Both the position numbers and the translations under genes were made by a program. A DNA stretch of 64,000 nucleotides from positions 62,001 through 126,000 of IMG/VR virus record IMGVR_UViG_3300048008_000449. One strand, written 5' to 3'. A model generated the notes under the pieces. That model saw only the letters and a list, made by a program, of their open reading frames with translations, was not told where the DNA came from and did no database searches. Below, piece by piece: positions 11,576 through 48,710 of this stretch (within the stretch, counting starts at the first letter, position 1; the number at the start of each line of letters is the position of its first letter).

Positions 11576-12754
11576 TTATTTATTTCCTAAGTTTGCTGGA
11601 CGTGGTTTTGGTTTTACTGTTGTTGTTTTTTCTAAATCTGCTGGACGTGGTTTTGGTTTTACTGTTGTCGTAGTTTGATCTTTTCCTAAGTTTGCCGGGC
11701 GTGGTTTTGGTATATTAGTTTGTGCTGGTACTGTAGGTTTAACTACAGGTGGCTTTGGATGTGGATGTTGGTGTCCTTGGCTCATATCCGCACTTGGACT
11801 ATGTTGACCTTTTTTCATAATTATTGGAACATTGCCTCGAATAGGTTTATTAATATCTTTTTGCATTGGATCAGATTTGTACGTATCAATTGGGTGCATG
11901 TCATAGTGATCATTTGGAACTGTTTTTAATGGATTCCATGTTGATTGTCCACCAGTTTTTGTTCCTGGTCCATCAGTCTTATGTTTAATTTCATTATCAA
12001 ATTTTGGTCCTGTTTTTCTATCTTGTATAGTCATCATAGGTGTATCAGTATTTGTAGGAGGGTTCATTTTCAATTGCCATTCGTCATAATCTATTCTCTT
12101 TTCAGCTACCCTAGCCATCATTTCTTTATGGTAAGCTGCATATGCTTTATAATGAGTATTTAGACTAGGAACATCTGCTTGAATTTTATCTGTGATACCT
12201 CTGAATTTATTATCTTCAGGTTTTTCTACGTTTTGTATTGCATGCTGTAATTCATGAACGGCAGTAAATCTATTAAGACTATCTGGACTCATGGTTATTG
12301 TTTTTGTACCAGCATCCCATTGTCCTAATGTTTTGCCACCATCTTCTGAATCTTCTAAATCATCTACTATAATATTGTAATCTTTTAAAAATGGATATGC
12401 TTTGTAAAGTTCAGGATGATCAATTAGATCACTAAATTTATACTTTTTGCCTATCTTTGCTCCATGATCTTTTATTTTAAGATCTTTATCAGATACTTCT
12501 TGTCGCCAATCACCATTTGGAGTTCTAAACGTTCCTGTTTCCCACCAAATATCAACTCTACTCCAACCTTCCTTTTCCATTTTCCTTGCAAGTTTTTCTC
12601 TGCTTTTATCATATATTTTAGCTTTTGGTCCAATAAATGTAGCTAACTTATCGTCACCTGGTAACTCGCCTTTCTTACGCTTAGACGAATTCATTTCTTT
12701 ATCAGATGTTGGCAGTCTTTCAAATAACTTATTTGTAATTTCGGTTATCTTCAT
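11576..12754 (-). CDS. LPD23-like domain with zincin HExxH motif and C-terminal Pro/Thr repeats
   Basis: IWWETG...DWRQEVSD...HPELYKAYP...HELQHAIQ; MKITEI start. Confidence 0.65.
   Translation of the reverse strand: MKITEITNKLFERLPTSDKEMNSSKRKKGELPGDDKLATFIGPKAKIYDKSREKLARKMEKEGWSRVDIWWETGTFRTPNGDWRQEVSDKDLKIKDHGAKIGKKYKFSDLIDHPELYKAYPFLKDYNIIVDDLEDSEDGGKTLGQWDAGTKTITMSPDSLNRFTAVHELQHAIQNVEKPEDNKFRGITDKIQADVPSLNTHYKAYAAYHKEMMARVAEKRIDYDEWQLKMNPPTNTDTPMMTIQDRKTGPKFDNEIKHKTDGPGTKTGGQSTWNPLKTVPNDHYDMHPIDTYKSDPMQKDINKPIRGNVPIIMKKGQHSPSADMSQGHQHPHPKPPVVKPTVPAQTNIPKPRPANLGKDQTTTTVKPKPRPADLEKTTTVKPKPRPANLGNK
11583..11712. repeat. Three coding repeats of (TTTVK)PKPRPA(N/D)L
   Basis: gg(a/g)cgtggttttgg occurs three times. 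Confidence 0.85.
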
Positions 12755-14598
12755 TTCTTTTTTCCTGCCTTCATGTTAGCACACCAGTGATACATTTTAG
12801 CTTTCTCACCGCTGGCTTTTTTTGCTTTGGCTCTTAGTTCTGTTACGCTACCGTTACAACTAGCACCACTACGTTTTACACGCCCTGGTCTGCTTTTGCC
12901 TTTTACTTTACCGTCTGCAAAGTTTTCTTCTACTGGTTCTTTATTGTCTACTGTTTGTGCCAATTTAGAAATTGTATCTCCAACTTCTATATTCTTATGT
13001 TGTATTCCAACACCCCCTGCATTTTGCCACTTGTTAATATTTTCTCCAAAATCATCAATTAATACATTTGAAGTTCCATCAGATTGTTTAGCGTATGCGG
13101 CTTTGTTGTGGTCAATAATAATTTTTGCTGGTGGGAACATACCTAAATGCTTTTTAATCCATTCACGCTTCTGTGGCTCTGAATTTGGATCTCCTGGAAG
13201 AGGTGCACTTAATATATTATATTTTCCTTTAAACTGCTTAATTGCGTTTAATAGATTTTTTGCATTACTTGTCATTGGTAAATTAATCCAAAAGTCATCT
13301 GTATCTTTGATTTTTTGTAATGCTTTGTTAACATCTGGAATATTTTTCCAATGTTTAACTCCCATCATTTTATTCCATACTCCAAAGAAGTCTGCTAATA
13401 CTCCATCCATGTCTACGTATATTTCTGATTTAGGTCCTACATCTTCAAGTATACTTTGAATATCTTCACCTAATAAATCTTGTTTAGTTGCTTTGAAATT
13501 GCTTTGCTTCCATTGTTGCTTTAGTGTATTTAATGTTTTACCAATTTCTGGTCCTTGAGGTACACCTTTAGCAATTAAGTCAGCACCGTTTACAGGAAAT
13601 TCTGGTACTGATGTAACCATAGCATGATCAGCCATTTTCTTTTGATCTTGTAATTCTGCTAGTGCTGATATTTTTTCTTTAGCTATACCATCAGCAATCA
13701 TATCTTCCACTTTCTTTTTATCAAGTTTATTATCTTTATTTTGAGATAAAAAGTTTAATAAATCAGCTTCTGTGTTTTTCATCTTCCAACGTTTTGCAAT
13801 GTCTACACTATTATTTAATTGTGCTAATACTATAATTGGATTACTATTATCTTTTACTGTGTTTAAATTATCTACATTAAGTCCTATTACTTGTGCTGCA
13901 CCTGTGTCTTTTATTGTTGCTAATATATTTGCAACGTTTTGTCCTGAAAGTATTTTGCCCATTTCTGACCAAATTCTTTCTGCACTTATTTGTGATAGTC
14001 CTTTTACATTAGAACTAATAGCTTCTAGTGTTTCTTTGTCCCAAGTAGGAGTTGATAATCTTCCTTGGAAACGGAAGTAACGTAATATACGTAAATAATC
14101 TTCTTGAATTCTATCTGCTGGATTTCCTACAAACTTACTTACTTTATCTTGTAAGTCGTCCATACCACCAAAGTAATCATGTATTTCGCCATCTAAATCC
14201 ATACTCATAGCGTTGTATGTTAAGTCTCTGCGTTTAGCATCTTCTTCCCAACTACGTACAAATTCTACCTTAGCATGTCTACCATCAGTTTCTTCATCTG
14301 ATCTTAATGTTGTAATTTCGTAAGGTTCGTTATTAATAACGGCTGTTATAGTTCCATGTTCTATACCGGTTGGTATATGTTTGATCATTGCTCTGTCAAA
14401 CATTTTTTGCATTTCTTGTGGAGTAGCATCAGTAGCTAAGTCAATATCTTTTGGTGATTTACCAAGTGCAACATCTCTAACTGCTCCGCCAACAATTCTT
14501 ATTTCAAAATTATGTCTTGCGAAGATACTGCCTAATTCTTTAACATCAGGTGATATTATACTTGTATCCTTGACTTCAGTTACTTCAAATATTTTCAT
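12751..14598 (-). CDS. cca: Class II CCA-adding tRNA nucleotidyltransferase fused to a HAD 5'(3')-nucleotidase-like domain and a small Cys-containing C-terminal module
   Basis: GGAVRD, DIDLAT, EITTLR, EDAKRRDLTYNA, EDYLRILR; then YVDMDGVLADF...LIDD. Confidence 0.9.
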   Translation of the reverse strand: MKIFEVTEVKDTSIISPDVKELGSIFARHNFEIRIVGGAVRDVALGKSPKDIDLATDATPQEMQKMFDRAMIKHIPTGIEHGTITAVINNEPYEITTLRSDEETDGRHAKVEFVRSWEEDAKRRDLTYNAMSMDLDGEIHDYFGGMDDLQDKVSKFVGNPADRIQEDYLRILRYFRFQGRLSTPTWDKETLEAISSNVKGLSQISAERIWSEMGKILSGQNVANILATIKDTGAAQVIGLNVDNLNTVKDNSNPIIVLAQLNNSVDIAKRWKMKNTEADLLNFLSQNKDNKLDKKKVEDMIADGIAKEKISALAELQDQKKMADHAMVTSVPEFPVNGADLIAKGVPQGPEIGKTLNTLKQQWKQSNFKATKQDLLGEDIQSILEDVGPKSEIYVDMDGVLADFFGVWNKMMGVKHWKNIPDVNKALQKIKDTDDFWINLPMTSNAKNLLNAIKQFKGKYNILSAPLPGDPNSEPQKREWIKKHLGMFPPAKIIIDHNKAAYAKQSDGTSNVLIDDFGENINKWQNAGGVGIQHKNIEVGDTISKLAQTVDNKEPVEENFADGKVKGKSRPGRVKRSGASCNGSVTELRAKAKKASGEKAKMYHWCANMKAGKKK

Positions 14599-25027: not shown

Positions 25028-25633
25028 TCAATTTCGCAATTCTTTATACTGGATAACTGTTTCAATTCTAATATTAAGATCATCGCTATGTGATAGTTTA
25101 AACAACATCATTGTTTCTTCACTGTTGCAAAACACAATTGGAACACTTTCTCTATTTCTATGCATAAAGTATCTAATGTGTACTATACGTCTATCATGGA
25201 AATCAAAGTTATCATATATCCATTTTATAGTAGCATTGTCTTTTTCTAGTGTACCAACACCATACTTTGGCCAACTTATTAGTTTATGTTTGTAGTTGTT
25301 ATACCATAACTTATCACGTATAACAACACTTCTATCTTTTTCGTATAATAGTTTTTTATGTGTATCACTTATTGGTTCGTGTATTTTATCTATTTTTCTA
25401 TATAAGAAATCATCAGATTTTATCTGATCAACCATATCAACGTCAGATGTATAAACTGCTAAATTATATGTTGTTTCTGATTTTTTTGTTTTAACACCAC
25501 GCCATATTGTTTGACCATCTAATCCTATTTTAGGATAATTGAAAACGTAGTTAAACGGCAGGTCTAGAAATTTAATACATGTATCAAAGTATCTGTAATA
25601 TAATGACTGCGATGGAAATACATTATTTTCCAT
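25028..25633 (-). CDS. Hypothetical protein
   Basis: Start re-called at MENNVF, overlapping the clpA stop. Confidence 0.6.
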   Translation of the reverse strand: MENNVFPSQSLYYRYFDTCIKFLDLPFNYVFNYPKIGLDGQTIWRGVKTKKSETTYNLAVYTSDVDMVDQIKSDDFLYRKIDKIHEPISDTHKKLLYEKDRSVVIRDKLWYNNYKHKLISWPKYGVGTLEKDNATIKWIYDNFDFHDRRIVHIRYFMHRNRESVPIVFCNSEETMMLFKLSHSDDLNIRIETVIQYKELRN

Positions 25634-27887
25634 TAATAAGTAACTTGTCTTTTTGCCAATCAAGCTCCAATGTAAACTCGCCTTCATTATTAAGTAGATA
25701 TTTTGCTAATGGTAATTTTACTGATTCGTTGATTACTCGTTGTAGTGGTCTTGCACCCATTGTAGGATCGTACCCTTTATCTTCTAGCATGGCTAATAAT
25801 CCTGGTCCCCACTGTAATACAATATTTCTACCTTCAACATATGATTCTAATTCTCCTAAGAACTTAATAACAATACGTTTCATATCATTTTGCTCTAGTG
25901 CGTTAAATTTAACAATTCCATCTAATCTATTTCTAAACTCTGGAGCAAAGTAATTGTTTACTGCATCATCAACTGCTTTTGCATTAAATGTTTCTTCGTT
26001 GAATCCAATTGTAGCAATTGCCGCATCTTTTGCACCTAGGTTACTAGTCATAATAATAATTGCATTTTTAGCACTTACTACTTTACCTGTACTGCTCGTA
26101 AGTGTACCTTCATCAAGTAAACTTAACAATACACTCATTAAGTCAGGGTGTGCTTTTTCTACTTCATCTAATAACAATAAGCAATTTGGATTATCTTCTA
26201 GATGACTTATTAGTAAGCCATCTCCTGCTTTACCATCACCATGTCCTACATAGCCTGGAGGTGATCCAATTAGTTTTGATACTGTATGACGTTCTTGATA
26301 TTCTGCCATATCATAACGTACAAGTTTCATACTCATTGCTTGTGCTAGACGTTTAGCAAGTTCTGTTTTACCAACACCTGTTGGACCCGTAAACAAATAA
26401 CTAGCAACAGGTTTAGTAGGATCTTTTAATCCAGCCATGCTAACTGTAATACTATCTACTACACGATCAACTGCTGGTTGTTGTCCAAATACTGTACTTT
26501 CTAAAAATGTTTTAACTTCTGTATGTTTTGTTACAGTCTGTTTATCTTCTACGTTACCTAAATGTTCTTTTGGTATTCCTGTAAGTCTTGCTACCTCTGC
26601 TCTAATTTCTTCTTCGCCTATAATAGTTAAGCGATCTGCTTCTGGTAAAATTCTATTAAATGCACATGCTCTATCAAGTATATCAAATGCTTTGTCTGGT
26701 AATTTCTTGTTAAAGATATATTGGTCACTTAGTTCAACTGCTAATTCTGCGGCATCTTCAGTAATACTAACATTGTGATAATGTTCATAAGATATCATTG
26801 TACCTCTAACTACTTCTTTTGCCTCAATTATATTAGGCTCATCACATACAACTTTTGTAAACCTACGTGCCAATGCACTTTCTTTTTCAAATACTTTTCT
26901 ATATTCTTCGTCTGTTGTAGCACCAATAACTTTTAGTTTTCCACTACTCAATGCAGGCTTTAACATATTACCAGCATCCATAGTACCATTTGTACTACCT
27001 GCTCCAATAATTTGATGTATCTCATCAATGAATAAAATAATGTTAGGCTCTTTAATTAATGCTTCGCCTAATTGTTTCATACGTTCTTCAAAGTCACCTC
27101 TATATTTGGTACCAGCAACTAACTTAGTCATATCTAATTCCCATACAACCTTGTCTTTAATAATGTCTGGAACGTTACCTTCTACAATAAGTTTTGCTAA
27201 TCCTTGTACAACTGCTGTTTTACCAACACCACTTCCACCTGTTAAAATAGCATTAGATTTTTTCTTACGTGCTACTGTTTGTACTAGGTCTTTTAATTCT
27301 TTTCTACGGCCAATTAAATCATCATAATCTTGGCTTTCTTCATTTAAATTATTACAAAATTGTTTTAATACTTCACGTGGAGTTACTGCTCTCTGACCGC
27401 CTGGTCCTGGCATACCTGCAGCCATACCATCTACTGGTCCAAAGATTTGTTCATCTTTCATTGCGGCTGTATCTTGCATCCAACTCATTACTTTGTTTTT
27501 GTTTAGGCCCAATTGTTCTGCATATTTAGATGACACACTATGTTCTTCACCTAGTATACTCAATACTAAGTCAAGTTGGTTAATTACTTTTTTGCCTTGA
27601 AACAATGCTTGTGTTAACGCACGATTAAATACACGTTCTAACATTTGTGTCTTAGCAGGATTTGGTTCTTCTTTAGTATTTTTTACTAATTCTTTACATT
27701 CTTTTTCTAAGTATTCAATTAATGCAATTTGCAAACTTTCTGCATCTGCATTAATTTCGTAACACATTGCTATTACATGTGGGTCGTCTAGAATCACTGC
27801 GGCTAAGTGTTCTATTGTAACATATTCGTGTTTGAACTTCTTAGCTAAGTTAATTGCTGTTATTACTATTTTTTCAATGTCTGTCAT
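25623..27887 (-). CDS. clpA: ATP-dependent Clp protease ATP-binding subunit ClpA
   Basis: Clp-N (HEYVTIEHL), two AAA+ modules (GVGKT/FIDEIH; GPTGVGKT/LLDEVEKAHP), IGF loop, no ClpB M-domain. Confidence 0.93.
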   Translation of the reverse strand: MTDIEKIVITAINLAKKFKHEYVTIEHLAAVILDDPHVIAMCYEINADAESLQIALIEYLEKECKELVKNTKEEPNPAKTQMLERVFNRALTQALFQGKKVINQLDLVLSILGEEHSVSSKYAEQLGLNKNKVMSWMQDTAAMKDEQIFGPVDGMAAGMPGPGGQRAVTPREVLKQFCNNLNEESQDYDDLIGRRKELKDLVQTVARKKKSNAILTGGSGVGKTAVVQGLAKLIVEGNVPDIIKDKVVWELDMTKLVAGTKYRGDFEERMKQLGEALIKEPNIILFIDEIHQIIGAGSTNGTMDAGNMLKPALSSGKLKVIGATTDEEYRKVFEKESALARRFTKVVCDEPNIIEAKEVVRGTMISYEHYHNVSITEDAAELAVELSDQYIFNKKLPDKAFDILDRACAFNRILPEADRLTIIGEEEIRAEVARLTGIPKEHLGNVEDKQTVTKHTEVKTFLESTVFGQQPAVDRVVDSITVSMAGLKDPTKPVASYLFTGPTGVGKTELAKRLAQAMSMKLVRYDMAEYQERHTVSKLIGSPPGYVGHGDGKAGDGLLISHLEDNPNCLLLLDEVEKAHPDLMSVLLSLLDEGTLTSSTGKVVSAKNAIIIMTSNLGAKDAAIATIGFNEETFNAKAVDDAVNNYFAPEFRNRLDGIVKFNALEQNDMKRIVIKFLGELESYVEGRNIVLQWGPGLLAMLEDKGYDPTMGARPLQRVINESVKLPLAKYLLNNEGEFTLELDWQKDKLLINGK

Positions 27888-32703: not shown

Positions 32704-33441
32704 TCAATCGGGAATTTTAATGCCATCAAACAGTATATCAGAATAGGTTGTTACTAGTTCTCTCCAGTTTGGCAATGGCGGGGAATTTATAATATCGCAT
32801 AATCTATAATATTCCATAGGTTTGTGCCTAAAGATTTCTCCAATATCAATTTTGTGTATTGCAATACCTTTGGCTTCAAATTCCATTTTATAATGGATAT
32901 ATTCTTCGTAATGATCTTTAAACTTTAATGGCTGTGCAAGATGAAATGTATCTGGAGCAATTGTTCTTTCATATGGTAAATTATGATCAGTTCCTACACA
33001 TATGGCAAACATATCTGCTAGTTCTTCTTGATCACAATCAAGTACAATATGTGTTGTTACATTAGTATCTTTATTATGTATAATATCAAATCTAGACAAT
33101 GCATAATTTAAGTAATGATATGGATTAAGTCTAAACACAAGTTTTGTAAAATCACCTACTCCTTGTCTTAGTGCCGCTTCAATTTGGTCATCAAATGGAT
33201 GTACTTCATTTATCCACTTATCACCAAATTTATTTTCACAATGAAATGTTTCAGGTCTCCAACTTCTACCTTGATGTCCTATCATATCTGTACCAGTAGG
33301 ATTTTCTTTTCTCATATCCATGTCAGGTACTTGTGCAAATCCTTCATGTCTTTGAATTAACCAAGAGATAAATTCACCTGGTAATCCTGAAGGATGTATT
33401 ATTGAAAATGCTTCTGGTTTTGGTCTTTCTAAAATAGGCAT
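32704..33441 (-). CDS. Hypothetical protein
   Basis: 245 aa, overlaps the radical SAM stop. Confidence 0.65.
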   Translation of the reverse strand: MPILERPKPEAFSIIHPSGLPGEFISWLIQRHEGFAQVPDMDMRKENPTGTDMIGHQGRSWRPETFHCENKFGDKWINEVHPFDDQIEAALRQGVGDFTKLVFRLNPYHYLNYALSRFDIIHNKDTNVTTHIVLDCDQEELADMFAICVGTDHNLPYERTIAPDTFHLAQPLKFKDHYEEYIHYKMEFEAKGIAIHKIDIGEIFRHKPMEYYRLCDIINSPPLPNWRELVTTYSDILFDGIKIPD

Positions 33442-34721
33442 GGTTGTTTTGGTCCGTAAATTATTTCTGCTAAATCTGGATTATAATCATACAAGTATAC
33501 ATCTCTAAATTTATCCTGTTCACGTACAAGTTCTTGGAATACAGATAAATGATGTTCTTTTGTATCTAATGCTTTTCTCATATCATTAAGTGTTCTAATA
33601 TTATGTGTGTCTTTATTATGATATCTTAGTTCTGCTTTGTTAATTATATTGTGTGCATGTTTTTTATAAGAATCTGGTAAGTTTCCAGATCTTAAATGTG
33701 CTGGAAATACTACTAGTCTTAAATTACTATCAGCTTTATGATCATATACAAAATCTAAAAAGTCTAGTGTATTATCATAATTAAATATTTGGTAACTAGC
33801 ATTAATTTGAACACCAAACCATTTGTTTTCTTGTGCAAACTTAGATAGCTTACCACATTGTTCTTCCATTTGGCTCCAAGTAAATACACCGTTACTACGC
33901 ATGTATTCAAACATTGGACCAGCGGCATCAATACTAATATCTAATGTAAGTTTTTTTAGTTTATGAAATAGTCCTAATTTTTCTACATTTACTTTTGATC
34001 CATTTGTAGTAATAACCATTTTAATTTTTTCTGGGTATCCGTGTTCTTCAATAAGTTCCATTAACCTATATGGACTATCATCCATAAATGGTTCTCCACC
34101 TGTCATCCAAATACTTCTGATACCTTTTAGTACTGTAGGATTCTTTTCTAAATATGGAATAATACTGTTAAAGTTTTTTGGGTTAGACCATTGAAACTTT
34201 TTATATTCTCTAGGAAACTTACTGTTCATGTGTTTAGCTTCAGGTATTAAACTGTTGCTGTAATTTGGACTACACATTCTACATTTAAAGTTACACACAT
34301 TACTAAAGTTTACAAATAAATGGCTTATGTCATTTCCTACTAACTTTGGAGTACGATATGGTTCAGGGTTGCCTAACTGATCCATCATCTTCTTTCCAAG
34401 CCAATTCATACGTTGACTTTTTTGTCCGTTCTTTTCTCTATTCAAACAGTTGGTACATCCATAAGTATCCCATTTACCGTCAAGCATGTTTTGACGTAAT
34501 GTTTGCATTTCTTTACTGTCGTGGCTCTCGCCCATGTCGTCATCACTCATCATGCAACGACTTACAACGCCTGAAGGATGCCAACTAATAGTATTAAATG
34601 GAACTGGACACCAACTTTTACTGTGTAGGTTTTTCCAGTTATCATCTTCAACTACTTTTGTTACAATATCCTTGGCAGGTATAATAAATTTATCTTTGTT
34701 TATGTCTGTTGGATTATTCAT
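33429..34721 (-). CDS. Radical SAM protein with N-terminal SPASM/twitch domain
   Basis: WCPVPF...RC...CTNC, CNFKCRMC, GGEP, TTNG. Confidence 0.9.
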   Translation of the reverse strand: MNNPTDINKDKFIIPAKDIVTKVVEDDNWKNLHSKSWCPVPFNTISWHPSGVVSRCMMSDDDMGESHDSKEMQTLRQNMLDGKWDTYGCTNCLNREKNGQKSQRMNWLGKKMMDQLGNPEPYRTPKLVGNDISHLFVNFSNVCNFKCRMCSPNYSNSLIPEAKHMNSKFPREYKKFQWSNPKNFNSIIPYLEKNPTVLKGIRSIWMTGGEPFMDDSPYRLMELIEEHGYPEKIKMVITTNGSKVNVEKLGLFHKLKKLTLDISIDAAGPMFEYMRSNGVFTWSQMEEQCGKLSKFAQENKWFGVQINASYQIFNYDNTLDFLDFVYDHKADSNLRLVVFPAHLRSGNLPDSYKKHAHNIINKAELRYHNKDTHNIRTLNDMRKALDTKEHHLSVFQELVREQDKFRDVYLYDYNPDLAEIIYGPKQPCLF

Positions 34722-38977: not shown

Positions 38978-39054
38978 TGGTACTCCCGGTAGGATTCGAA
39001 CCTACGATCGACCCGTTATGAGCGGGTGGCATTAGACCGCTATGCTACAAGAGT
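38978..39054 (-). tRNA. tRNA with CAT anticodon, probably tRNA-Ile2 (lysidine type); Met not excluded
   Basis: Cloverleaf; anticodon arm ACCCG-CTCATAA-CGGGT; GGTTCGAATCC; encoded CCA. Confidence 0.85.
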
Positions 39055-39058
39055 ATTC

Positions 39059-39144
39059 TGGTGCCTCCTCCCGGACTCGAACCGGGACGCCATTATGGCC
39101 ACAGATTTTAAGTCTGTTATGTCTACCTATTCCATCAAGGAGGC
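39059..39144 (-). tRNA. tRNA-Leu(TAA)
   Basis: Long variable arm; ACAGA-CTTAAAA-TCTGT; encoded CCA. Confidence 0.95.
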
Positions 39145-39149
39145 TAAAT

Positions 39150-39226
39150 TGGCCTGCTCTACAGGATTCGAACCTGTGACCTACTGCTTAGAAGGCAGTT
39201 GCTCTATCCAGCTGAGCTAAGAGCAG
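39150..39226 (-). tRNA. tRNA-Arg(TCT)
   Basis: ACTGC-CTTCTAA-GCAGT; encoded CCA. Confidence 0.95.
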
Positions 39227-41823: not shown

Positions 41824-41900
41824 TGGCGGACCCGAGAGGATTCGAACCTCTGACCTCCTGTTTCGTAGACAGGCATTCTATCCAGCTGAACTACGGGTCC
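41824..41900 (-). tRNA. tRNA-Arg(ACG)
   Basis: CCTGT-CTACGAA-ACAGG; encoded CCA; upstream sigma70-like promoter. Confidence 0.95.
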
Positions 41901-42614: not shown

Positions 42615-42928
42615 AATGGTCCCATCTTCGTTAATGGAGGCACTTCTGTTGCCAGGTAGTACCCACCCCTACGTGCTTAGTTAAACTAAGCCGCTAATGC
42701 CATTTCTGGCGAATAATTGTCATTTGCAATTATAGTTTTTGTTCGCGGTAACGGCGCTTACATCCCGGTAACTCCACTCATCTATCCTAACAGTCGATCC
42801 TAGTTCAGCCCCATCAAAAACACACTTACAAGCAGTGATTCAATATCTCATCTATAAATGTGTTTATGGTGGAGCTGCTCGGTACTGCCCCGAGGTCCTG
42901 TCTAGTCGTCAAATCGCTTCAACGTTAC
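42615..42928 (-). ncRNA. ssrA: Two-piece (circularly permuted) tmRNA, alphaproteobacterial type; tag (A)ANDNYSPEMALAA
   Basis: Acceptor piece ...GGGGCAGTACCGAGCAGCTCCACCA (CCA at 42867), hairpin spacer, GGGGCTGAACTAGGATCGAC starting 42812 (G3:U70), tag ORF 42727-42686; TATAAATA at 42935-42942; outer ends approximate. Confidence 0.93.
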
Positions 42929-42951
42929 AAGTTATATTTATACACTCTTGT

Positions 42952-43458
42952 TTATGTTTTGTCAACCTTTTTAAAGACATATTCAAAATTTTGTGTATTT
43001 GGATTATGTTGTACTAATTTTGCACCATTGCTAATATGAAAATGTGTAGCCATTGGTGTAAGTGGAGAAAGTGTAACCAAACGTTCAATATCATTTTTAT
43101 CTTTATAATAATCTTTTAGTTTAGCTACAATTTCTCTGCCAGCTCCTTTTTTACGTGACCATACTGTGTATGCAACTGCTATACTAGCATCATCAAGTAA
43201 ATTAGCATTCTGGCTTATAATGTTTAGTTCTCTTTCACTTTGTGGAATATCGTTACAATATGCAATGCATATAATACCTTGTATCTCATCATTGGCTTTT
43301 AGACCAAATATTTTTCTACCAAATGATGTTCTAAATTCCATATCTAAATTAGGCCTTACTGGATCTTCAGAACAATCTATGTCAGTTAGTTCAACTAGCT
43401 CACTAGATGATACCCACTTAAAGAAGTTATCAATTGAATCTTTAATTACTTTCAACAA
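42952..43458 (-). CDS. Hypothetical protein, GNAT-like
   Basis: YTVWS.KKGAGR, VTLSP...FHISNGA. Confidence 0.55.
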   Translation of the reverse strand: MLKVIKDSIDNFFKWVSSSELVELTDIDCSEDPVRPNLDMEFRTSFGRKIFGLKANDEIQGIICIAYCNDIPQSERELNIISQNANLLDDASIAVAYTVWSRKKGAGREIVAKLKDYYKDKNDIERLVTLSPLTPMATHFHISNGAKLVQHNPNTQNFEYVFKKVDKT

Positions 43459-44405: not shown

Positions 44406-45150
44406 AACTATAAATTGGAGCCTTGCAGAATTATGTGCATGGATATGTGAATATGCATATGAAGATAAGCAAGCAATGAAAACATACCTATCTGCTAACA
44501 AAATAAAACATACAAATTTAAAATTCTTTGAACAAGATAACGCACAAGCATATGGAATTACAATGCATGATTATATTGTTATTGCATTTAGAGGAACAGA
44601 GCCACATCAATTTAAAGATATCTTAGCTGATATCAAAGCATGGCCTGCTGATGCAGAAACAAAAGGACATGTACATTCAGGATTCAAAGGCGAATTAGAT
44701 AAACTATATCCTAATATTATAAAGTGGTTAGGTAAAAAAGTAACTACTAAAAAAATTGTAATTACTGGACATAGTTTAGGAGCTGCAATGGCAACTATAT
44801 GTGCAAGTAGATTTCATCAGTTAGGTGCTGATCAAGTATTATATACTTACGGATGTCCTAGAACAGGAAATAAAGAATGGGGTAAACAATTTGATGACAT
44901 AGAAGCATATCGTTTTGTTAATAACAATGATATTGTATGCCAAGTTCCACCATTTGGATATTATTCACACATAGGTGAATTATACTATATGTCTTATACT
45001 AATCGTATTAGTAACAAAATGAATTGGTGGCAACGTTTTGGAGATAAAGTAAGAGGAAGATGCAAAGCATGGAGTAAGTTTGAATTCTTCGATAGTTTAT
45101 ATGATCACCTAGGTGCTCATTACATTAAAAAAATTACTTCTCGTAAATAA
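44395..45150 (+). CDS. Class 3 lipase
   Basis: AFRGT, VHSGF, GHSLG, DIV..VP, C-terminal His. Confidence 0.9.
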   Translation: MKNKTINWSLAELCAWICEYAYEDKQAMKTYLSANKIKHTNLKFFEQDNAQAYGITMHDYIVIAFRGTEPHQFKDILADIKAWPADAETKGHVHSGFKGELDKLYPNIIKWLGKKVTTKKIVITGHSLGAAMATICASRFHQLGADQVLYTYGCPRTGNKEWGKQFDDIEAYRFVNNNDIVCQVPPFGYYSHIGELYYMSYTNRISNKMNWWQRFGDKVRGRCKAWSKFEFFDSLYDHLGAHYIKKITSRK

Positions 45151-46108
45151 GTTGTGTTTCATCAATACCGTGTTTCCACGTACCTTCTAAACTTTTAACA
45201 ACACAAGATCCCATTTTATTAATTGTAAGTTCTAATTGTTCTTGACTACCTACGAGTTCTGCTTTTAATACAGAATAACATGGTTGTGGATTCTTTTCTA
45301 TGGCAAGTATACACATATGTTCTAATCCATTATAACGCCAATTGTAACCAATACGTGTATCTTTGCCTTCAATAAATCCATCGTAACGTATTACATCCCA
45401 TAATATAAACTTAACTTTATCTGGCTCTGCTTCTAATACTTTTTCATTGCTAGTTTCTGCAATTTTAGGACCATCTGCAACAACTGCATGTCCGTCATAA
45501 ACAGTACTTTGTCCTTGTGCTAGATTTTTAAATTGTTCGTCATACATATCCCAACCAAGTATTGCATTACCATCTTTATCATTATAGGTAACTGTATCAT
45601 TGTGTATAATAATATTAATACGCAAACCTCTAGAACATTGCTGTACTGAAGCTGGAAATAATTCAAATGATTTGTAATCTTGTGTGGAAGGTGTGCTTAT
45701 AGGATAGCCCATTATTAATCCGGGCCATACTTTGTTAATTGTATCTATTTCTAAACCTAAGTCTAAATCTTGTCTGATTACAGATACAAATATTGGAGCA
45801 TCATATTGATTCATATGTTGCATAGCCATATTACATGAAAAGTACTTTTCTTTTTCAGTGTACTTCTCTTGAATAATATCATCTATTATGTGAGTGAATT
45901 TTGCAATACCCATACCAAACTTTTTACCCATTCGCTTTGGAGTAAAATCTGGCATGTTGAGATTGATCCACGGATTATAAGAAATACTTATAATCCGCTT
46001 CAATATAACTTCTTTGCTGTATTGCTCTAAGATATCTAGTTTATCTTCTTGCGAAGGAGCTACAGTTAAATTTTGTATAATTTCTGATAATAGATGTATT
46101 TTGCTCAT
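45134..46108 (-). CDS. T4 gp30-like DNA ligase paralog lacking KxDG and the OB domain, likely inactive
   Basis: YNP, DLDLG..TINKVWPGLI, YDG, LWDVI, VVKS..G.W; motif I reads QQCSRG. Confidence 0.6.
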   Translation of the reverse strand: MSKIHLLSEIIQNLTVAPSQEDKLDILEQYSKEVILKRIISISYNPWINLNMPDFTPKRMGKKFGMGIAKFTHIIDDIIQEKYTEKEKYFSCNMAMQHMNQYDAPIFVSVIRQDLDLGLEIDTINKVWPGLIMGYPISTPSTQDYKSFELFPASVQQCSRGLRINIIIHNDTVTYNDKDGNAILGWDMYDEQFKNLAQGQSTVYDGHAVVADGPKIAETSNEKVLEAEPDKVKFILWDVIRYDGFIEGKDTRIGYNWRYNGLEHMCILAIEKNPQPCYSVLKAELVGSQEQLELTINKMGSCVVKSLEGTWKHGIDETQLIYEK

Positions 46109-46187
46109 ACAACTATTTATGCGATTAAAACTATACTTTATTTTGGTTTATTAATAAACTCAAGTTCGTCATCAGTGTAAGGCCACA

Positions 46188-46442
46188 TTATGATGATTCC
46201 TTGTTTTTATCTGTTGTATAACCAAATCTTCCTCTGTAAACTTTACCACCATTTGCGATATACGTGATATCACCTCTACAAATACCAATGTCATTTAATT
46301 CGTATTCAGTTAATTGTGAAAGAGCTTTATAAGTTGCATTACGACTTGAACGTCTTGCTCTTGCTTCTAGAAATGCATCAAATGCATTTCTAACTTTGTC
46401 GCAAATTGCACAATAAGTTTTTGTTAGTGTTAGTGTTGTCAT
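46188..46442 (-). CDS. DUF1127 (YjiS-like) protein
   Basis: RR..T.KALSQLTEYELNDIGICRGDI. Confidence 0.85.
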   Translation of the reverse strand: MTTLTLTKTYCAICDKVRNAFDAFLEARARRSSRNATYKALSQLTEYELNDIGICRGDITYIANGGKVYRGRFGYTTDKNKESS

Positions 46443-46660
46443 TTTGCTTTTCTCGCTTCAATTTCTTCACGTACTTCTGCAAGTTCTAACATTAACGCTT
46501 TTGCTTCTGCATAGTACCCTTGTCTTGCAAGTTCACTAGCGGCTTTTGATCTGCCTGCTTGTTCACCCATCTCAATTAATCGTGCAAATACTGCACTAAT
46601 TTTTTCGCCAATTACTTCACATAATCTGCATGTTGTTCTGTATACTGTTGCTGTAGTCAT
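46439..46660 (-). CDS. Small protein with N-terminal CxxC similar to its DUF1127 neighbour
   Basis: MTTATVYRTTCRLC vs MTTLTLTKTYCAIC. Confidence 0.6.
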   Translation of the reverse strand: MTTATVYRTTCRLCEVIGEKISAVFARLIEMGEQAGRSKAASELARQGYYAEAKALMLELAEVREEIEARKAK

Positions 46661-46662
46661 TG

Positions 46663-46866
46663 TTAGATCCATCCTGTAAGGTTTTTATTAATTAAGTCAG
46701 CTCTATATTTAGGTCCCTGACCTCCGTTTGCTCGCATGTATTCATATGCATACGACCAGTCTTTACCGTATTCTGTTTTTGCGTAAGTCATTAGATTCTG
46801 GTCGATAGCCACACGAGTCTTACCGCCAAATATCAATGACCAAGCACTAAAAAAGTGTTTTATCAT
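46663..46866 (-). CDS. Small hypothetical protein
   Basis: YAKTEYGKDWSYAY motif; SD GGAG. Confidence 0.65.
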   Translation of the reverse strand: MIKHFFSAWSLIFGGKTRVAIDQNLMTYAKTEYGKDWSYAYEYMRANGGQGPKYRADLINKNLTGWI

Positions 46867-46884
46867 TTGTATTCTCCGTTATGT

Positions 46885-47090
46885 ATGTGGATGTTTTTGG
46901 GAAAGCATCCAATTGTTTTGCCAGTCTCTCCTGGCCGCTACCACTGCGCCTATGTTGCCACTGCGCCACTTGTAAGGCATGGGTTATGCCCTGGTCTTTC
47001 CCGAGTGCCACTCATTTTTTCTAAGCTGAGGTCGCTTTGTGCTACTTTGCACATGTAAATTACTGTACAACGTTGTACGGTTTTATTACA
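46885..47090 (-). ncRNA. Candidate structured RNA leader with hairpins and repeated AGTGG
   Basis: GC-rich non-coding island with at least 5 hairpins, downstream of TAAATA (47095-47100). Confidence 0.6.
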
Positions 47091-47179
47091 CATCTATTTA
47101 TCATTTAGACCGATAAAAAGTAAGTAAGTATTGTTGCACTATACGCATTTACGAATTGCGTGTAGAGCATGACTCAATA

Positions 47180-48304
47180 TCATTTAGTTGTTGTACTCTC
47201 ATAGGTACGATTAAACTGATTATGTACTGTTACAAATGTTGTACATTTACTGAGTTGTTTTAATTTTAATGCACCTGCATATGTGCAAGTACTGCGTAAT
47301 CCGCCTAGTAGATCTTGAATAGTACTTTCAACATGTCCACGATATGGAACAAGTACTTCTCTACCTTCACTACTACGATAATCTTTTAGGCCACCAAAGT
47401 GTTTTGTGTTTGCGGCATCACTGCTCATACCGTAAAACTGTACGAACTTCTTTTCTTGTACTTTATGTTTACGATTATTTAGATGCTCGCCAATTTCATA
47501 TTCTAATTCATTTGTTTCATAGAACTTTGTAATTACTTCGCCGCCGCCTTGATCATGCCCAGCAAGCATACCACCAAGCATAACAAAATCTGCTCCACCT
47601 GCAAAGGCCTTAGCGACATCGCCAGGGCAAGTACACCCACCGTCAGCAATAATGTGACCCCCAAGTCCATGGGCGGCATCTGCACACTCGATAACCGCAG
47701 ATAACTGCGGGTATCCAACACCAGTTTGTATCCTAGTAGTGCAAACAGAGCCGGGACCAATACCCACTTTAACAATATCAGCTCCACTTAAAATTAACTC
47801 CTCTGTCATTTCTCCGGTAACTACGTTACCTGCTATAATTACTAAGTCTGGAAATTGATCACGTACTTTACGAACACGTGCCGCAAAATGATCACTATAA
47901 CCATTAGCAATATCCATACATATATATTTTAATTGATTAGTATCTGCTTGTACACTAACTAACTTTAAAAAGTCAGCATCACTTGTACCAATACTCATAG
48001 CGACATTTTGTGCTCGTCTACTATCTGGGTAATCGTTATTAAAAAATTCTACAAGTTGTTCTGCTGAATAAGTCTTAACTAGGCAAGTAAAGATACCTTG
48101 TTGTGCAAGAGTGTCTGCCATTTCAAACGTACCAACACCATCCATGTTAGCGGCCATAATAGGAACACCTTCATATTCTGCTTTACTGTTTCTAAATTTA
48201 AACTTGCGTTCTAGCCTTACTTGTTTACGTGATACAAGTGTTGAACGTTTGGGACGAATCAATACATCACTATAATCTAGTTTTACTTCGTTTTCAATTC
48301 TCAT
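47180..48304 (-). CDS. guaC: GMP reductase
   Basis: [37 protein letters not shown]. Confidence 0.95.
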
Positions 48305-48710
48305 TATTACATACCCTTTTTCTTAAATCTGTTGTGCTAAATCTGTGATCTCTTTTATTAAAGTGTAACTCAATGCCACGCTTACGACATACATCTTTTC
48401 CAGTAAATTCTTTTTCTTTATATTCGTCGCCTAAGAATCTAACATCTAACTGAAACAGCTCTAATATATCAATTAAATCTTGTTCAGTTTGATATGGTAC
48501 AATCTCATCTACAAACTTTAATGCATTTAGTTGTGCATAACGTTCTACCATTGTTTGTATAGGCTTATTTTTTGTATCTGGACGATCAATAGTTGGATCA
48601 CTTTGCAATCCTACAATTAAAATATCACAGTTTGCTTTTGCTTCTCTGAGCATGCCTATATGACCTGCGTGTAACAAATCAAATGTACTACATGTAAATC
48701 CTATTCTCAT
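48294..48710 (-). CDS. Cytidylyltransferase (TagD-like, HIGH fold)
   Basis: [13 protein letters not shown]. Confidence 0.88.

What the first reader, a model, noticed from the sequence alone, without database searches (positions are those of the whole stretch)
46188..47100. Structured GC-rich RNA with AGUGG repeats leading a DUF1127 small-protein operon
Seen on the minus strand after TAAATA: a GTACAACGTTGTAC palindrome and hairpins TGTGC/GCACA, CTCA/TGAG, GGCAT/ATGCC, GCCAG-GAGAGA-CTGGC and TGGATG-CTTTCCCAAAAA-CATCCA. Four AGTGG(C/T) repeats and two GARAGAC motifs are interspersed. Three small ORFs follow: two with MTT...CxxC starts, one of them DUF1127. Established: in Rhodobacter the DUF1127 protein CcaF1 binds RNA and is co-transcribed with repeated sRNAs. 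I do not recognise this as a known riboswitch. Inference: a novel sRNA/protein-sponge or riboswitch module with cognate small RNA-binding proteins.
Basis: partly seen in the sequence, partly recalled or inferred. Interest (0 to 1): 0.68.

Follow-up and report, generated by a model that had tools for sequence, protein, structure and literature searches.

The report
Conserved structured leader RNA in marine phages
A roughly 200-base non-coding RNA with base-pairing conserved across hundreds of uncultured marine phage contigs sits in front of an operon of tiny proteins (one a DUF1127 protein); it matches no catalogued RNA family and its function is not yet known.

Summary
Window 46867-47102 (minus strand) is a GC-rich, non-coding 5' leader. 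It lies behind a T4-late-type GATAAATA promoter box and ahead of three small ORFs, the last of which is DUF1127 (Pfam 40.5 bits).

- **Conservation:** A covariance model of the five core hairpins hit all 80 viral loci that were found only through the first small protein. Each hit ended about 20 nt before that ORF.
- **Structure:** 21 of 25 modelled pairs show compensatory changes. A 5' H-type pseudoknot also covaries.
- **Novelty:** No Rfam family matches, even at E<=10.
- **Distribution:** There is one copy per phage record. None was found in cultured phages, and the only hits in cellular genome collections are three MAG contigs.
- **Expression:** Marine metatranscriptome contigs from three studies cover the leader and ORFs. 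Coverage drops near the promoter.

The RNA is modular. It has optional 5' hairpins, then a pseudoknot or an alternative hairpin. One to four hairpins with purine loops ending in AGA follow. Last comes a nearly invariant hairpin with a UUUCCUC or CUUUCCC loop next to the Shine-Dalgarno sequence.

DUF1127 accompanies the RNA in 55 of 58 distinct loci. My best guess (about 0.35-0.4) is a protein-bound cis-regulatory leader analogous to, but not a member of, the alphaproteobacterial Cuckoo/CcsR-DUF1127 loci. Processed anti-SD sRNA, riboswitch, host-factor decoy and plain stabiliser remain open.

The parts
47095..47102 (-). GATAAATA, a T4-late-type promoter box
   Evidence: [GT/A]ATAAATA lies upstream of the motif in 35 of 38 distinct leaders (also seen in the protein-ascertained set). 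In the window, ATAAATA occurs 28 times against 46 expected, and 25 of the 28 are on the coding strand.
47063..47080 (-). Accessory hairpin a (CCGTACAACGTTGTACAG); lineage-specific
   Evidence: Present in the window and in type-A relatives, absent in L095 and L141. Metatranscriptome contigs end at its centre, position 47071.
47038..47053 (-). Accessory hairpin b (TGTGC-AAAGTA-GCACA); lineage-specific
   Evidence: The stems covary (GUGC/GCAC, AUAC/GUAU, GUAC/GUAC) around a conserved AAAGUA loop. Absent in other lineages.
47011..47037 (-). H-type pseudoknot: stem 1 AAGC/GCUU, loop GACCUCA, A-rich strand AGAAAAAA, stem 2 CUCA/UGAG
   Evidence: 95.7% of cells paired across 23 distinct sequences. 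Stem 1 is G-C in 16 and A-U in 7. Stem 2 is C-G, A-U or U-A at one position. Slid controls reach at most 36%. About a third of leaders carry an unrelated hairpin here instead.
46991..47005 (-). H1: 4-bp stem (with a bulged C in the window) and GAAAGA loop
   Evidence: Helix 1 of model R1 is 98.4% paired, and 3 of its 4 pairs show compensatory changes.
46976..46990 (-). H2: GGCAU-AACCC-AUGCC
   Evidence: Helix 2 is 99.6% paired, and 4 of 5 pairs show compensatory changes in the protein-ascertained set. H2 is absent in the L177 lineage.
46969..46975 (-). Conserved linker UUACAAG
   Evidence: Nearly invariant (UUA[C/A]AAG) in alignments A2, A3 and A4.
46944..46968 (-). H3: variable insertion hairpin. 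Weak in the window (GCGC/GCGC); holds two of the AGTGG copies
   Evidence: Length and sequence vary and the hairpin is absent in some leaders. All 5 pairs show compensatory changes, but only 74% of cells are paired.
46920..46935 (-). H4: GCCAG-GAGAGA-CUGGC, the second hairpin with an AGA-ending loop
   Evidence: Helix 5 is 100% paired, and 3 of 4 pairs show compensatory changes. Hairpins of this class occur 1-4 times per leader, against 0.12 in shuffled leaders.
46889..46910 (-). H5: GGAUG-CUUUCCCAAAAA-CAUCC, a pyrimidine-loop hairpin next to the ribosome-binding site
   Evidence: Helix 6 is 89% paired, and 5 of 5 pairs show compensatory changes. In other lineages the sequence is the nearly invariant GGGGUAUUGCUUUCCUCAAGCAUCC.
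46864..46877 (-). Shine-Dalgarno GGAG (46877-46874) and ATG of ORF1 (46866-46864)
   Evidence: Read directly from the sequence. The same arrangement holds in all relatives.
46663..46866 (-). ORF1, 67 aa, family A (..YAKTEY..DW.YAY..); viral-only family without Pfam or PHROG match
   Evidence: 236 viral loci encode relatives.
46439..46660 (-). ORF2, 73 aa, family B (MTT..CxxC..GRSKAASELARQGY..EAKALM)
   Evidence: Present in 43 of 58 distinct cassettes.
46188..46442 (-). ORF3, 84 aa, DUF1127 with an arginine-rich stretch
   Evidence: Pfam PF06568, E 2.3e-10, 40.5 bits. A DUF1127-type motif is present in 55 of 58 distinct cassettes.

Best explanation
**Shown**
- Window 46867-47102 (minus strand) is the non-coding, highly structured 5' leader of a late-transcribed phage operon of small proteins (family A, family B, DUF1127).
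- It belongs to a widespread RNA motif, not found in Rfam or in the paper library searched, of uncultured marine phage contigs whose few informative genes are T4-like.
- The motif is built from modules: a 5' pseudoknot or alternative hairpin, one to four hairpins with purine loops ending in AGA, hairpin H2, a variable insert, and a nearly invariant pyrimidine-loop hairpin (H5) 10-25 nt before the Shine-Dalgarno sequence.

**Inferred mechanism**
- The repeated AGA-loop hairpins are binding sites for several copies of a small basic RNA-binding protein.
- The most likely candidate is the arginine-rich DUF1127 protein encoded on the same transcript.
- Occupancy of the leader next to H5 and the ribosome-binding site would then set translation and/or stability of the operon mRNA, as autogenous control.
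- This works like the Cuckoo/CcsR-CcaF1 (CIN1) RNA-protein loci of Alphaproteobacteria, without being a member of that RNA family.

The confidence given (0.38) is for the inferred mechanism. That this is a genuine conserved structured leader RNA I hold at about 0.95.
For: **Structure and conservation**
- Model R1 hit 81 of 81 sources: 80 loci ascertained only by the family-A protein, plus the window. Each hit ends about 20 nt upstream of the ORF.
- 21 of 25 pairs show compensatory changes. 89.8% of cells are paired, against 74% in shuffles and at most 42% in slid controls.
- The pseudoknot covaries.

**Non-coding**
- 36 of 50 distinct homologues have stops in all three forward frames.
- Lengths run from 73 to 142 nt, in all classes modulo 3.

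**Promoter**
- The box is present in 35 of 38 distinct leaders and is strand-biased in the window.
- A gp55-like gene lies on a related 335-kb contig that carries the motif.

**Expression**
- RNA-library contigs from three studies cover the region.
- X16 and X17 contigs span 46204 or 46318 to 47071, that is, the leader and the ORFs (X16 all but the last 16 nt of ORF3; X17 about half of ORF3). Coverage collapses upstream of about 47052-47071.

**Modularity and repeated sites**
- AGA-loop hairpins occur 1-4 times per leader, against 0.12 in shuffles.
- The L177 lineage lacks H2 but keeps two such hairpins and H5.

**Partner**
- DUF1127 is present in 55 of 58 distinct cassettes.
- The DUF1127 protein CcaF1 binds RNA and is co-transcribed with structured sRNAs lying in 5' or 3' UTRs (PMC8034643).
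Against: - There is no direct evidence that any protein binds the leader.
- DUF1127 proteins can also act through protein-protein contacts, for example with PhoR (title and abstract of PMC12501420).
- 3 of 58 cassettes lack a recognisable DUF1127 motif.
- In one large lineage, H4 carries a GGAAGUU loop instead of an AGA loop.
- The Shine-Dalgarno sequence lies in an A-rich, apparently unpaired stretch, so no repression structure is evident.
- Metatranscriptome contigs cannot show a true 5' end, strand or abundance. The end at 47071 falls in the centre of a palindrome and could be an artefact.
- The window's own record yielded no gp55 homologue, although it is only 56% complete.
Confidence: 0.38

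Rival explanations
1. The leader is a precursor of a stable processed sRNA, like the 5'-UTR-derived CcsR/NfeR RNAs. Its pyrimidine loops (H2 ..UCCC, H5 UUUCCUC/CUUUCCC) would pair with Shine-Dalgarno sequences of host or phage mRNAs late in infection, possibly with the DUF1127 protein helping its maturation.
For: - H5 and H2 loops are pyrimidine-rich and complementary to AGGAGA or GGAGA.
- Known DUF1127 loci carry anti-SD sRNAs processed from UTRs (PMC8034643).
- Summed contig depth is higher over the leader than over the ORFs in X15 and X18.
Against: - Depth over the conserved leader is inflated by contigs from related phages, so it is no measure of abundance (the tool's own caveat).
- The loops are short (a 3-6 nt C/U core) and are not the CCUCCUCCC motif.
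- The fixed position right next to the operon's own ribosome-binding site argues for a cis role.
- No processing site is visible.
Confidence: 0.2
2. The leader is a riboswitch: a metabolite- or ion-binding aptamer that controls translation of the operon.
For: - It has the 5'-UTR position, high sequence conservation of unpaired linkers (UUACAAG, G-rich joints), covarying stems and a variable insert, adjacent to the SD.
- The pseudoknot has an A-rich third strand, as in preQ1-I and SAM-II type folds.
Against: - No Rfam riboswitch matches, even at E<=10.
- No closing stem or junction exists. The only long-range pairing predicted (GGGAAAG:CUUUCCC) is not maintained: 20 distinct leaders have a GAUAGA loop while most keep CUUUCC in H5, and the few H5 variants do not restore the pairing.
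- Whole modules are exchanged, multiplied or lost between lineages (pseudoknot against hairpin, H2 absent, 1-4 AGA hairpins).
- The downstream genes give no metabolic hint.
Confidence: 0.1
3. The leader is a decoy or sponge, or a recruitment site, for a host RNA-binding factor such as Hfq, a CsrA-, ProQ- or S1-type protein, or an RNase. It would titrate that factor or use it during late infection.
For: - It carries repeated purine-rich (ARN-like) loops and an AGAAAAAA strand.
- GGA lies at several stem-loop junctions.
- The number of similar hairpins varies.
- It appears abundant in metatranscriptomes.
Against: - The host is unknown and no host factor could be tested.
- There is a single copy with only 1-4 sites.
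- The tight linkage to the small-protein cassette is left unexplained.
Confidence: 0.12
4. The leader is a passive stabiliser or translation enhancer. Stable 5' structures protect the late mRNA from 5'-end-dependent decay and hold the ribosome-binding site open, with no specific ligand.
For: - It has 5'-terminal hairpins or a pseudoknot.
- The SD lies in an unstructured A-rich stretch after H5.
Against: Near-invariance of loop and linker sequences (AGA loops, UUACAAG, the 25-nt H5 block) across lineages whose stems have diverged is more than stability alone requires.
Confidence: 0.15
5. The region is protein-coding, or is a chance GC-rich patch.
For: ORFs of 33-54 aa can be drawn across it in the window.
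Against: - Stops occur in all three frames in 36 of 50 homologues.
- Indels are of every length class.
- Substitutions are compensatory for base-pairing.
Confidence: 0.01

Closest known systems
CIN1 loci: Cuckoo / CcsR / NfeR (Rfam ar14) sRNAs with the DUF1127 protein CcaF1 in Alphaproteobacteria (PMC8034643)
   Same: - A structured RNA with pyrimidine-rich hairpin loops is co-transcribed with a small arginine-rich DUF1127 gene.
- The RNA can lie in the 5' UTR, as in Sinorhizobium.
- The window's phage also carries an alphaproteobacterial-type tmRNA, which hints at a host of that class.
   Different: - There are no CCUCCUCCC loops.
- There is no Rfam ar14 hit.
- The architecture differs: pseudoknot, AGA-loop hairpins, H2 and H5.
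- There is one RNA per locus rather than tandem homologous sRNAs.
- It is phage-borne and driven by a T4-late-type promoter.
- The cassette also holds families A, B and D, and DUF3563.
Autogenous translational operators of T4 (gene 32 leader pseudoknot, gene 43 operator hairpin, RegA sites)
   Same: - It is a structured leader at the 5' end of a phage mRNA.
- A 5' H-type pseudoknot precedes the ribosome-binding site by a long distance.
- A protein encoded on the mRNA is proposed to bind it.
   Different: - There is no sequence or family relationship.
- The rest of this leader is highly structured rather than an unstructured A/U tract.
- The bound protein here is hypothetical.
Lambdoid boxB hairpins bound by arginine-rich N peptides
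   Same: Short stems capped by purine loops (GAAAGA, AAGAGA, GACAGA here; GAAAA, GAAGA, GACAA recalled from memory for boxB), combined with an arginine-rich small protein in the same operon.
   Different: - These are hexaloops ending in AGA, not GNRA-like pentaloops.
- There are several copies.
- No antitermination context is evident.
- The resemblance comes from memory and was not tested.
preQ1-I / SAM-II type H-pseudoknot riboswitches
   Same: The 5' module has a 4-bp stem, a loop that pairs with a downstream strand, and an A-rich connecting strand.
   Different: - No Rfam hit.
- The module is replaced by an ordinary hairpin in about a third of leaders, so it cannot be the essential sensor.

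Membership tests
Cuckoo / CcsR / ar14 sRNA (CIN1 locus) | Two hairpins whose loops carry the CCUCCUCCC anti-SD motif | tested here: not met
   The leader loops are AACCC or AUCCC (H2) and CUUUCCCAAAAA or UUUCCUC (H5). There is no CCUCCUCCC anywhere in 46867-47110.
Cuckoo / CcsR / ar14 sRNA (CIN1 locus) | Match to the Rfam covariance model | tested here: not met
   cmscan of 46750-47250 against all 4227 Rfam families gave no match at E<=10. None was found at gathering score in the whole window either.
Cuckoo / CcsR / ar14 sRNA (CIN1 locus) | Adjacent, co-transcribed DUF1127 ORF | tested here: met
   ORF3 is DUF1127. DUF1127 is present in 55 of 58 distinct cassettes. RNA contigs bridge the leader and the ORFs, which is suggestive only.
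Cuckoo / CcsR / ar14 sRNA (CIN1 locus) | RNase E-dependent processing into discrete sRNAs; binding by the DUF1127 protein | not testable with these tools
   This needs Northern blots, end mapping and EMSA.
Riboswitch (any described class) | Match to a described aptamer family | tested here: not met
   Searches gave no Rfam match.
Riboswitch (any described class) | A single integrated ligand pocket, usually a junction closed by a conserved stem | tested here: not met
   The hairpins lie in series. The candidate closing helix GGGAAAG:CUUUCCC lacks compensation. Modules are lost, swapped or multiplied between lineages.
Riboswitch (any described class) | Ligand-dependent conformational change | not testable with these tools
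   This needs in-line probing or ITC.
T4-type late transcription unit | TATAAATA box a few bases upstream of the transcript start | tested here: met
   [G/T/A]ATAAATA lies upstream in 35 of 38 distinct leaders. In the window the box is depleted overall (28 against 46 expected), and 25 of 28 copies are on the coding strand.
T4-type late transcription unit | Phage-encoded gp55-type late sigma factor | tested here: inconclusive
   There is no hit in the window's record (56% complete) or in G002. A weak hit (E 1.2e-5, 31% identity over residues 20-115) lies on the related 335-kb contig that carries the motif.
DUF1127 (PF06568), ORF3 | Score above the Pfam gathering threshold | tested here: met
   40.5 bits against a cut-off of 23.3, E 2.3e-10.

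The most novel reading that the evidence does not exclude
The leader and the DUF1127 protein form a phage-borne RNA-protein module of a new kind. The RNA is either a new riboswitch class or is cut from the operon mRNA into an abundant anti-Shine-Dalgarno sRNA. With its small-protein partners, it would reprogramme host translation or RNA decay late in infection in abundant marine bacteria.
Probability: 0.2. Interest if true: 0.8.

Novelty: new variant of a known kind. Interest (0 to 1): 0.62.

Why it matters
DUF1127 is a very large family of tiny bacterial proteins, and its mode of action is still debated between RNA binding and protein-protein contacts.

This phage lineage offers a compact natural pairing of a DUF1127 gene with one well-defined RNA supported by covariation. 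That makes direct tests straightforward: EMSA or CLIP, reporter fusions and structure probing.

The finding also adds a well-supported structured RNA family, absent from Rfam, that is present in at least several hundred marine viral contigs and visible in ocean metatranscriptomes. It further points to a conserved late-expressed cassette of five small-protein families of unknown role in large uncultured marine phages.

Tried and rejected
- **Rfam:** No match at gathering thresholds over the whole window or at E<=10 on the region.
- **Cultured phages:** blastn with the region and tblastn with a family-A protein against 50,697 phage records found nothing.
- **Long-range closing helix:** The GGGAAAG:CUUUCCC helix from the single-sequence MFE fold is rejected. 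RNAalifold and the model prefer local hairpins H1 and H5. The H1 loop variants GAUAGA and GACAGA are not compensated in H5.
- **H1-H2 loop pairing or alternative fold:** GGAUA:UAUCC is appealing in one lineage but does not covary (L171, L198).
- **AGUGG / UGGN repeats as T-box-like tRNA-end binders:** Rejected, because these repeats are absent in whole lineages.
- **All-against-all column scan for extra tertiary pairs:** It gave nothing beyond the modelled helices.
- **Fold of family A:** Low confidence (pLDDT 64.5, three helices), so no fold search was run.
- **gp55 in the window's own record:** Not found.
- **Other copies:** None in the window's 204-kb record.
- **Relatives through the genome search:** Not possible for a virus record.
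- **Not used:** The large protein searches were not needed. The complex predictor was not used because no protein-protein binding is claimed.
Full report
**What is in the window**

On the minus strand, a GMP-reductase/IMPDH-family gene ends at 47180. A 313-nt intergenic stretch follows. Three small ORFs come next:
- ORF1: 46866-46663, 67 aa.
- ORF2: 46660-46439, 73 aa.
- ORF3: 46442-46188, 84 aa.

After them lies a T4-type ATP-dependent DNA ligase. ORF3 is DUF1127 (PF06568, 40.5 bits against a cut-off of 23.3). ORF1 and ORF2 match nothing in Pfam or PHROGs. Their nearest ESM-Atlas clusters are unnamed and viral.

GC reaches 0.50-0.54 over 46900-47050, against about 0.32 around it. The window is part of a 204,772-bp IMG/VR virus record estimated to be 56% complete.

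**Is it a real RNA structure?**

Rfam gave nothing, at curated thresholds or at E<=10. I therefore collected relatives in a way that does not depend on the RNA.
- The ORF1 protein and then an alignment of its family were used to fetch viral loci.
- 236 stretches in IMG/VR encode a relative, and the best 80 were kept.
- A covariance model (R1) was built from 17 sequences of a different sub-lineage, with five hand-assigned hairpins H1-H5.
- R1 hit all 80 loci and the window (46890-47015, minus strand, 64.8 bits, E 3e-17). Each hit ended about 20 nt before the ORF.

On the 50 distinct sequences:
- 89.8% of pair cells are standard pairs, against 74% in column shuffles and at most 42% when partners are slid by 1-3 columns.
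- 21 of 25 pairs show changes on both sides.
- H2 was invariant in my first, pattern-ascertained set. In the protein-ascertained set it covaries at four of five pairs.

A separate alignment of the 5' module supports an H-type pseudoknot across 23 distinct sequences:
- Stem 1 is GAGC/GCUC in 16 and AAGC/GCUU in 7.
- Stem 2 is C-G, A-U or U-A at one position.
- 95.7% of cells are paired.

The region is not coding. 36 of 50 homologues have stops in all three forward frames, and lengths range from 73 to 142 nt in all classes modulo 3.

**Anatomy**

Read 5' to 3' on the minus strand of the window:
- GATAAATA box, 47102-47095.
- Two accessory hairpins, 47080-47063 and 47053-47038.
- Pseudoknot, 47037-47011.
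- H1 with a GAAAGA loop, 47005-46991.
- H2, 46990-46976.
- Linker UUACAAG.
- A variable hairpin H3, 46968-46944.
- H4 with a GAGAGA loop, 46935-46920.
- H5 with a CUUUCCCAAAAA loop, 46910-46889.
- GGAG, 46877-46874, then ATG at 46866.

Comparison shows the family is modular:
- The two accessory hairpins occur only in some lineages. They are absent in L095 and L141, whose ORF1 is about 80% identical.
- In about a third of leaders the pseudoknot is replaced by an unrelated covarying hairpin followed by ACACAUAGACAC.
- H3 varies in length or is absent.
- H2 is missing in the L177 lineage.
- In the lineages other than the window's own, H5 is an almost invariant 25-nt block, GGGGUAUUGCUUUCCUCAAGCAUCC.

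The recurring unit is a short stem capped by a purine loop ending in AGA and closed by G-C, often preceded by UGAC or GRCAC.
- Loop variants include GAAAGA, GAUAGA, GAGAGA, AAAAGA, AAGAGA, GACAGA and GCGCAGA.
- By a strict count it occurs 1-4 times per leader, against 0.12 per shuffled leader.

Two of the four lie in the window-specific H3.

**Transcription**

A box matching [G/T/A]ATAAATA precedes the motif in 35 of 38 distinct leaders; the same box precedes nearly all of the 56 protein-ascertained leaders printed. This is the consensus of T4 late promoters (established knowledge).
- In the window, ATAAATA is rarer than chance (28 against 46 +/- 7).
- 25 of the 28 copies are on the coding strand, several of them exactly 5 nt before an ATG.
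- This is the behaviour of a functional signal.
- A gp55-like late sigma factor was found only on a related 335-kb contig that also carries the motif (E 1.2e-5). It was not found in the incomplete record of the window, so this point stays inconclusive.

Six RNA libraries hold the stretch, four of them with at least half of its sampled words; I laid those four, from three studies. Their contigs, laid on 45000-48400 (3401 bases, within the operators' limit), show the following:
- In X16 and X17, single contigs run from 46204 or 46318 to 47071. That covers the leader and ORF1 and ORF2, plus ORF3 to within 16 nt of its stop in X16 and about half of it in X17.
- In X16 the contig is followed by Illumina adapter sequence.
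- In X18, depth falls to zero in 47052-47165.
- In X15, depth falls from about 200 to below 10 there.
- Contigs of related leaders (type-A insert, other SD regions) also appear as loose ends, so relatives are in the RNA libraries too.

Caveats:
- These are contigs, so they show neither strand nor true ends nor level.
- Depth over the conserved leader sums relatives.
- 47071 is the centre of the palindrome, so the end there may be technical.

**Distribution**
- There is one copy per record in the four virus records or MAGs searched whole.
- There is no match in 50,697 deposited phage genomes, by DNA or by the family-A protein.
- A 21-base pattern of H5 over one genome for each of 185,579 prokaryote species found three contigs, all in Tara Oceans MAGs (a Neomarinimicrobiota and a Flavobacteriales bin). 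One is 335 kb long and bears the gp55-like gene.
- I take these to be phage contigs binned with cells; this is inference.
- DNA holders are seawater and marine viral metagenomes.

**The genes it leads**

Downstream lies a cassette of small proteins in variable order:
- Family A: ..YAKTEY..DW.YAY...
- Family B: MTT..CxxC..GRARAAAELARQGY..EAK.LM.
- DUF1127.
- A 44-aa family D: ..MEYRSYC...
- DUF3563: Pfam 3.9e-7.

Of 58 distinct loci with enough sequence, A is in 58 (by ascertainment), DUF1127 in 55, B in 43, D in 29 and DUF3563 in 5.

In loci found through the RNA pattern instead, the first gene after the motif can be family B (L050), DUF1127 (L031, L080) or DUF3563-like (L030, L105). The RNA therefore belongs to the cassette as a whole rather than to one gene.

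**How it most likely works**

The following is shown: this is a conserved, structured, transcribed, non-coding leader placed immediately before the ribosome-binding site of the first cassette gene. The rest is inference.

Several points favour a protein-binding leader over a single ligand pocket:
- A hairpin class is repeated in variable number.
- Loop sequences are conserved beyond what the stems require.
- Whole modules are lost or exchanged.
- No closing helix exists.

The arginine-rich DUF1127 protein on the same transcript is the obvious candidate. The only DUF1127 protein studied for RNA binding, CcaF1, binds RNA directly. It is also co-transcribed with structured Cuckoo/CcsR sRNAs that lie in the 5' or 3' UTR, depending on lineage (PMC8034643).

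I therefore propose autogenous control: cassette protein binds the AGA-loop hairpins and, through H5 next to the SD, sets translation or stability. My confidence in this specific mechanism is about 0.35-0.4.

The rivals, each scored in its own section:
- A processed anti-SD sRNA.
- A riboswitch.
- A decoy or recruitment site for a host RNA-binding factor.
- A passive stabiliser.

A counterweight is that small DUF1127 proteins have also been reported to act through PhoR (title and abstract of PMC12501420).

**Comparison and novelty**

The closest known system is the CIN1 locus (Cuckoo/CcsR/ar14 RNAs plus DUF1127). The phage element works like it in layout, but it fails two defining tests: it has no CCUCCUCCC loops and no ar14 model match. 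I therefore do not file it as a member.

Neither of two full-text searches for DUF1127, one of them combined with 'phage', returned a paper on a phage-borne DUF1127 locus or this motif. I rate it a new variant of a known kind, an RNA co-transcribed with a DUF1127 gene. The RNA family itself appears to be undescribed.

Noticed in passing
window 42633-42979 (-); tRNAs at 38978-39226 and 41824-41900 (-): The phage record carries a permuted, alphaproteobacterial-type tmRNA (RF01849 at 123 bits, RF04321 at 111 bits; tag peptide ANDNYSPEMALAA) and four tRNA genes (Met, Leu, Arg, Arg). This hints at an alphaproteobacterial host.
   Followed up: no
window, e.g. 10979-10965, 46120-46106, 55365-55351, 57021-57007, 1806-1792 (-): ATAAATA is depleted overall and strand-biased. 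In five cases it sits exactly 5 nt before the ATG of an ORF (68, 68, 229, 324 and about 1085 aa). If T4 spacing rules hold, that would give leaderless or nearly leaderless late mRNAs.
   Followed up: partly
window 46663-46690 (-) and e.g. L009, L023, L031, L046, L129, L177: Small proteins of different families (A, DUF1127, DUF3563) end in the same C-terminal tail, TNxNL[K/R/T]GW[V/I]. This always occurs in the gene just before the family-B gene, which starts at, overlaps or lies a few bases past the stop (usually UAAUG; UAACAAUG in the window). Synonymous variation shows that the peptide is what is conserved.
   Followed up: partly
L220, L221, L222 (genome contigs; G001:C57, 335 kb): The motif occurs on contigs of Tara Oceans MAGs labelled Neomarinimicrobiota and Flavobacteriales. 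The 335-kb contig also has a gp55-like gene, so these look like large phage contigs binned with cellular genomes.
   Followed up: partly
window 47071 (-): Metatranscriptome contigs of two runs from one sample end exactly at the centre of the GTACAACGTTGTAC palindrome, and adapter sequence follows in one of them. This is either a discrete RNA 5' end, such as cleavage in the hairpin loop, or a library or assembly artefact at a palindrome.
   Followed up: no
L023:3650-4081, L031, L129 (relatives): In several related phages the small-protein cassette is followed by a plastocyanin/azurin-family copper protein (Pfam Copper-bind, 9.4e-16) instead of the DNA ligase.
   Followed up: no
window 47508-47849: A GC-rich stretch (0.50-0.57) inside the GMP-reductase/IMPDH-family gene collects RNA contigs with many mismatches in run X15. 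This is probably cross-mapping from other organisms' conserved IMPDH or GMP-reductase genes.
   Followed up: no
window 12751-14598, 25623-27887, 33429-34721 (-): This part of the phage also encodes a fusion of tRNA nucleotidyltransferase with a 5'-3' deoxyribonucleotidase-like domain, an ATP-dependent protease of 754 aa (phrog_4871, E 4.6e-226) and a radical-SAM protein.
   Followed up: no
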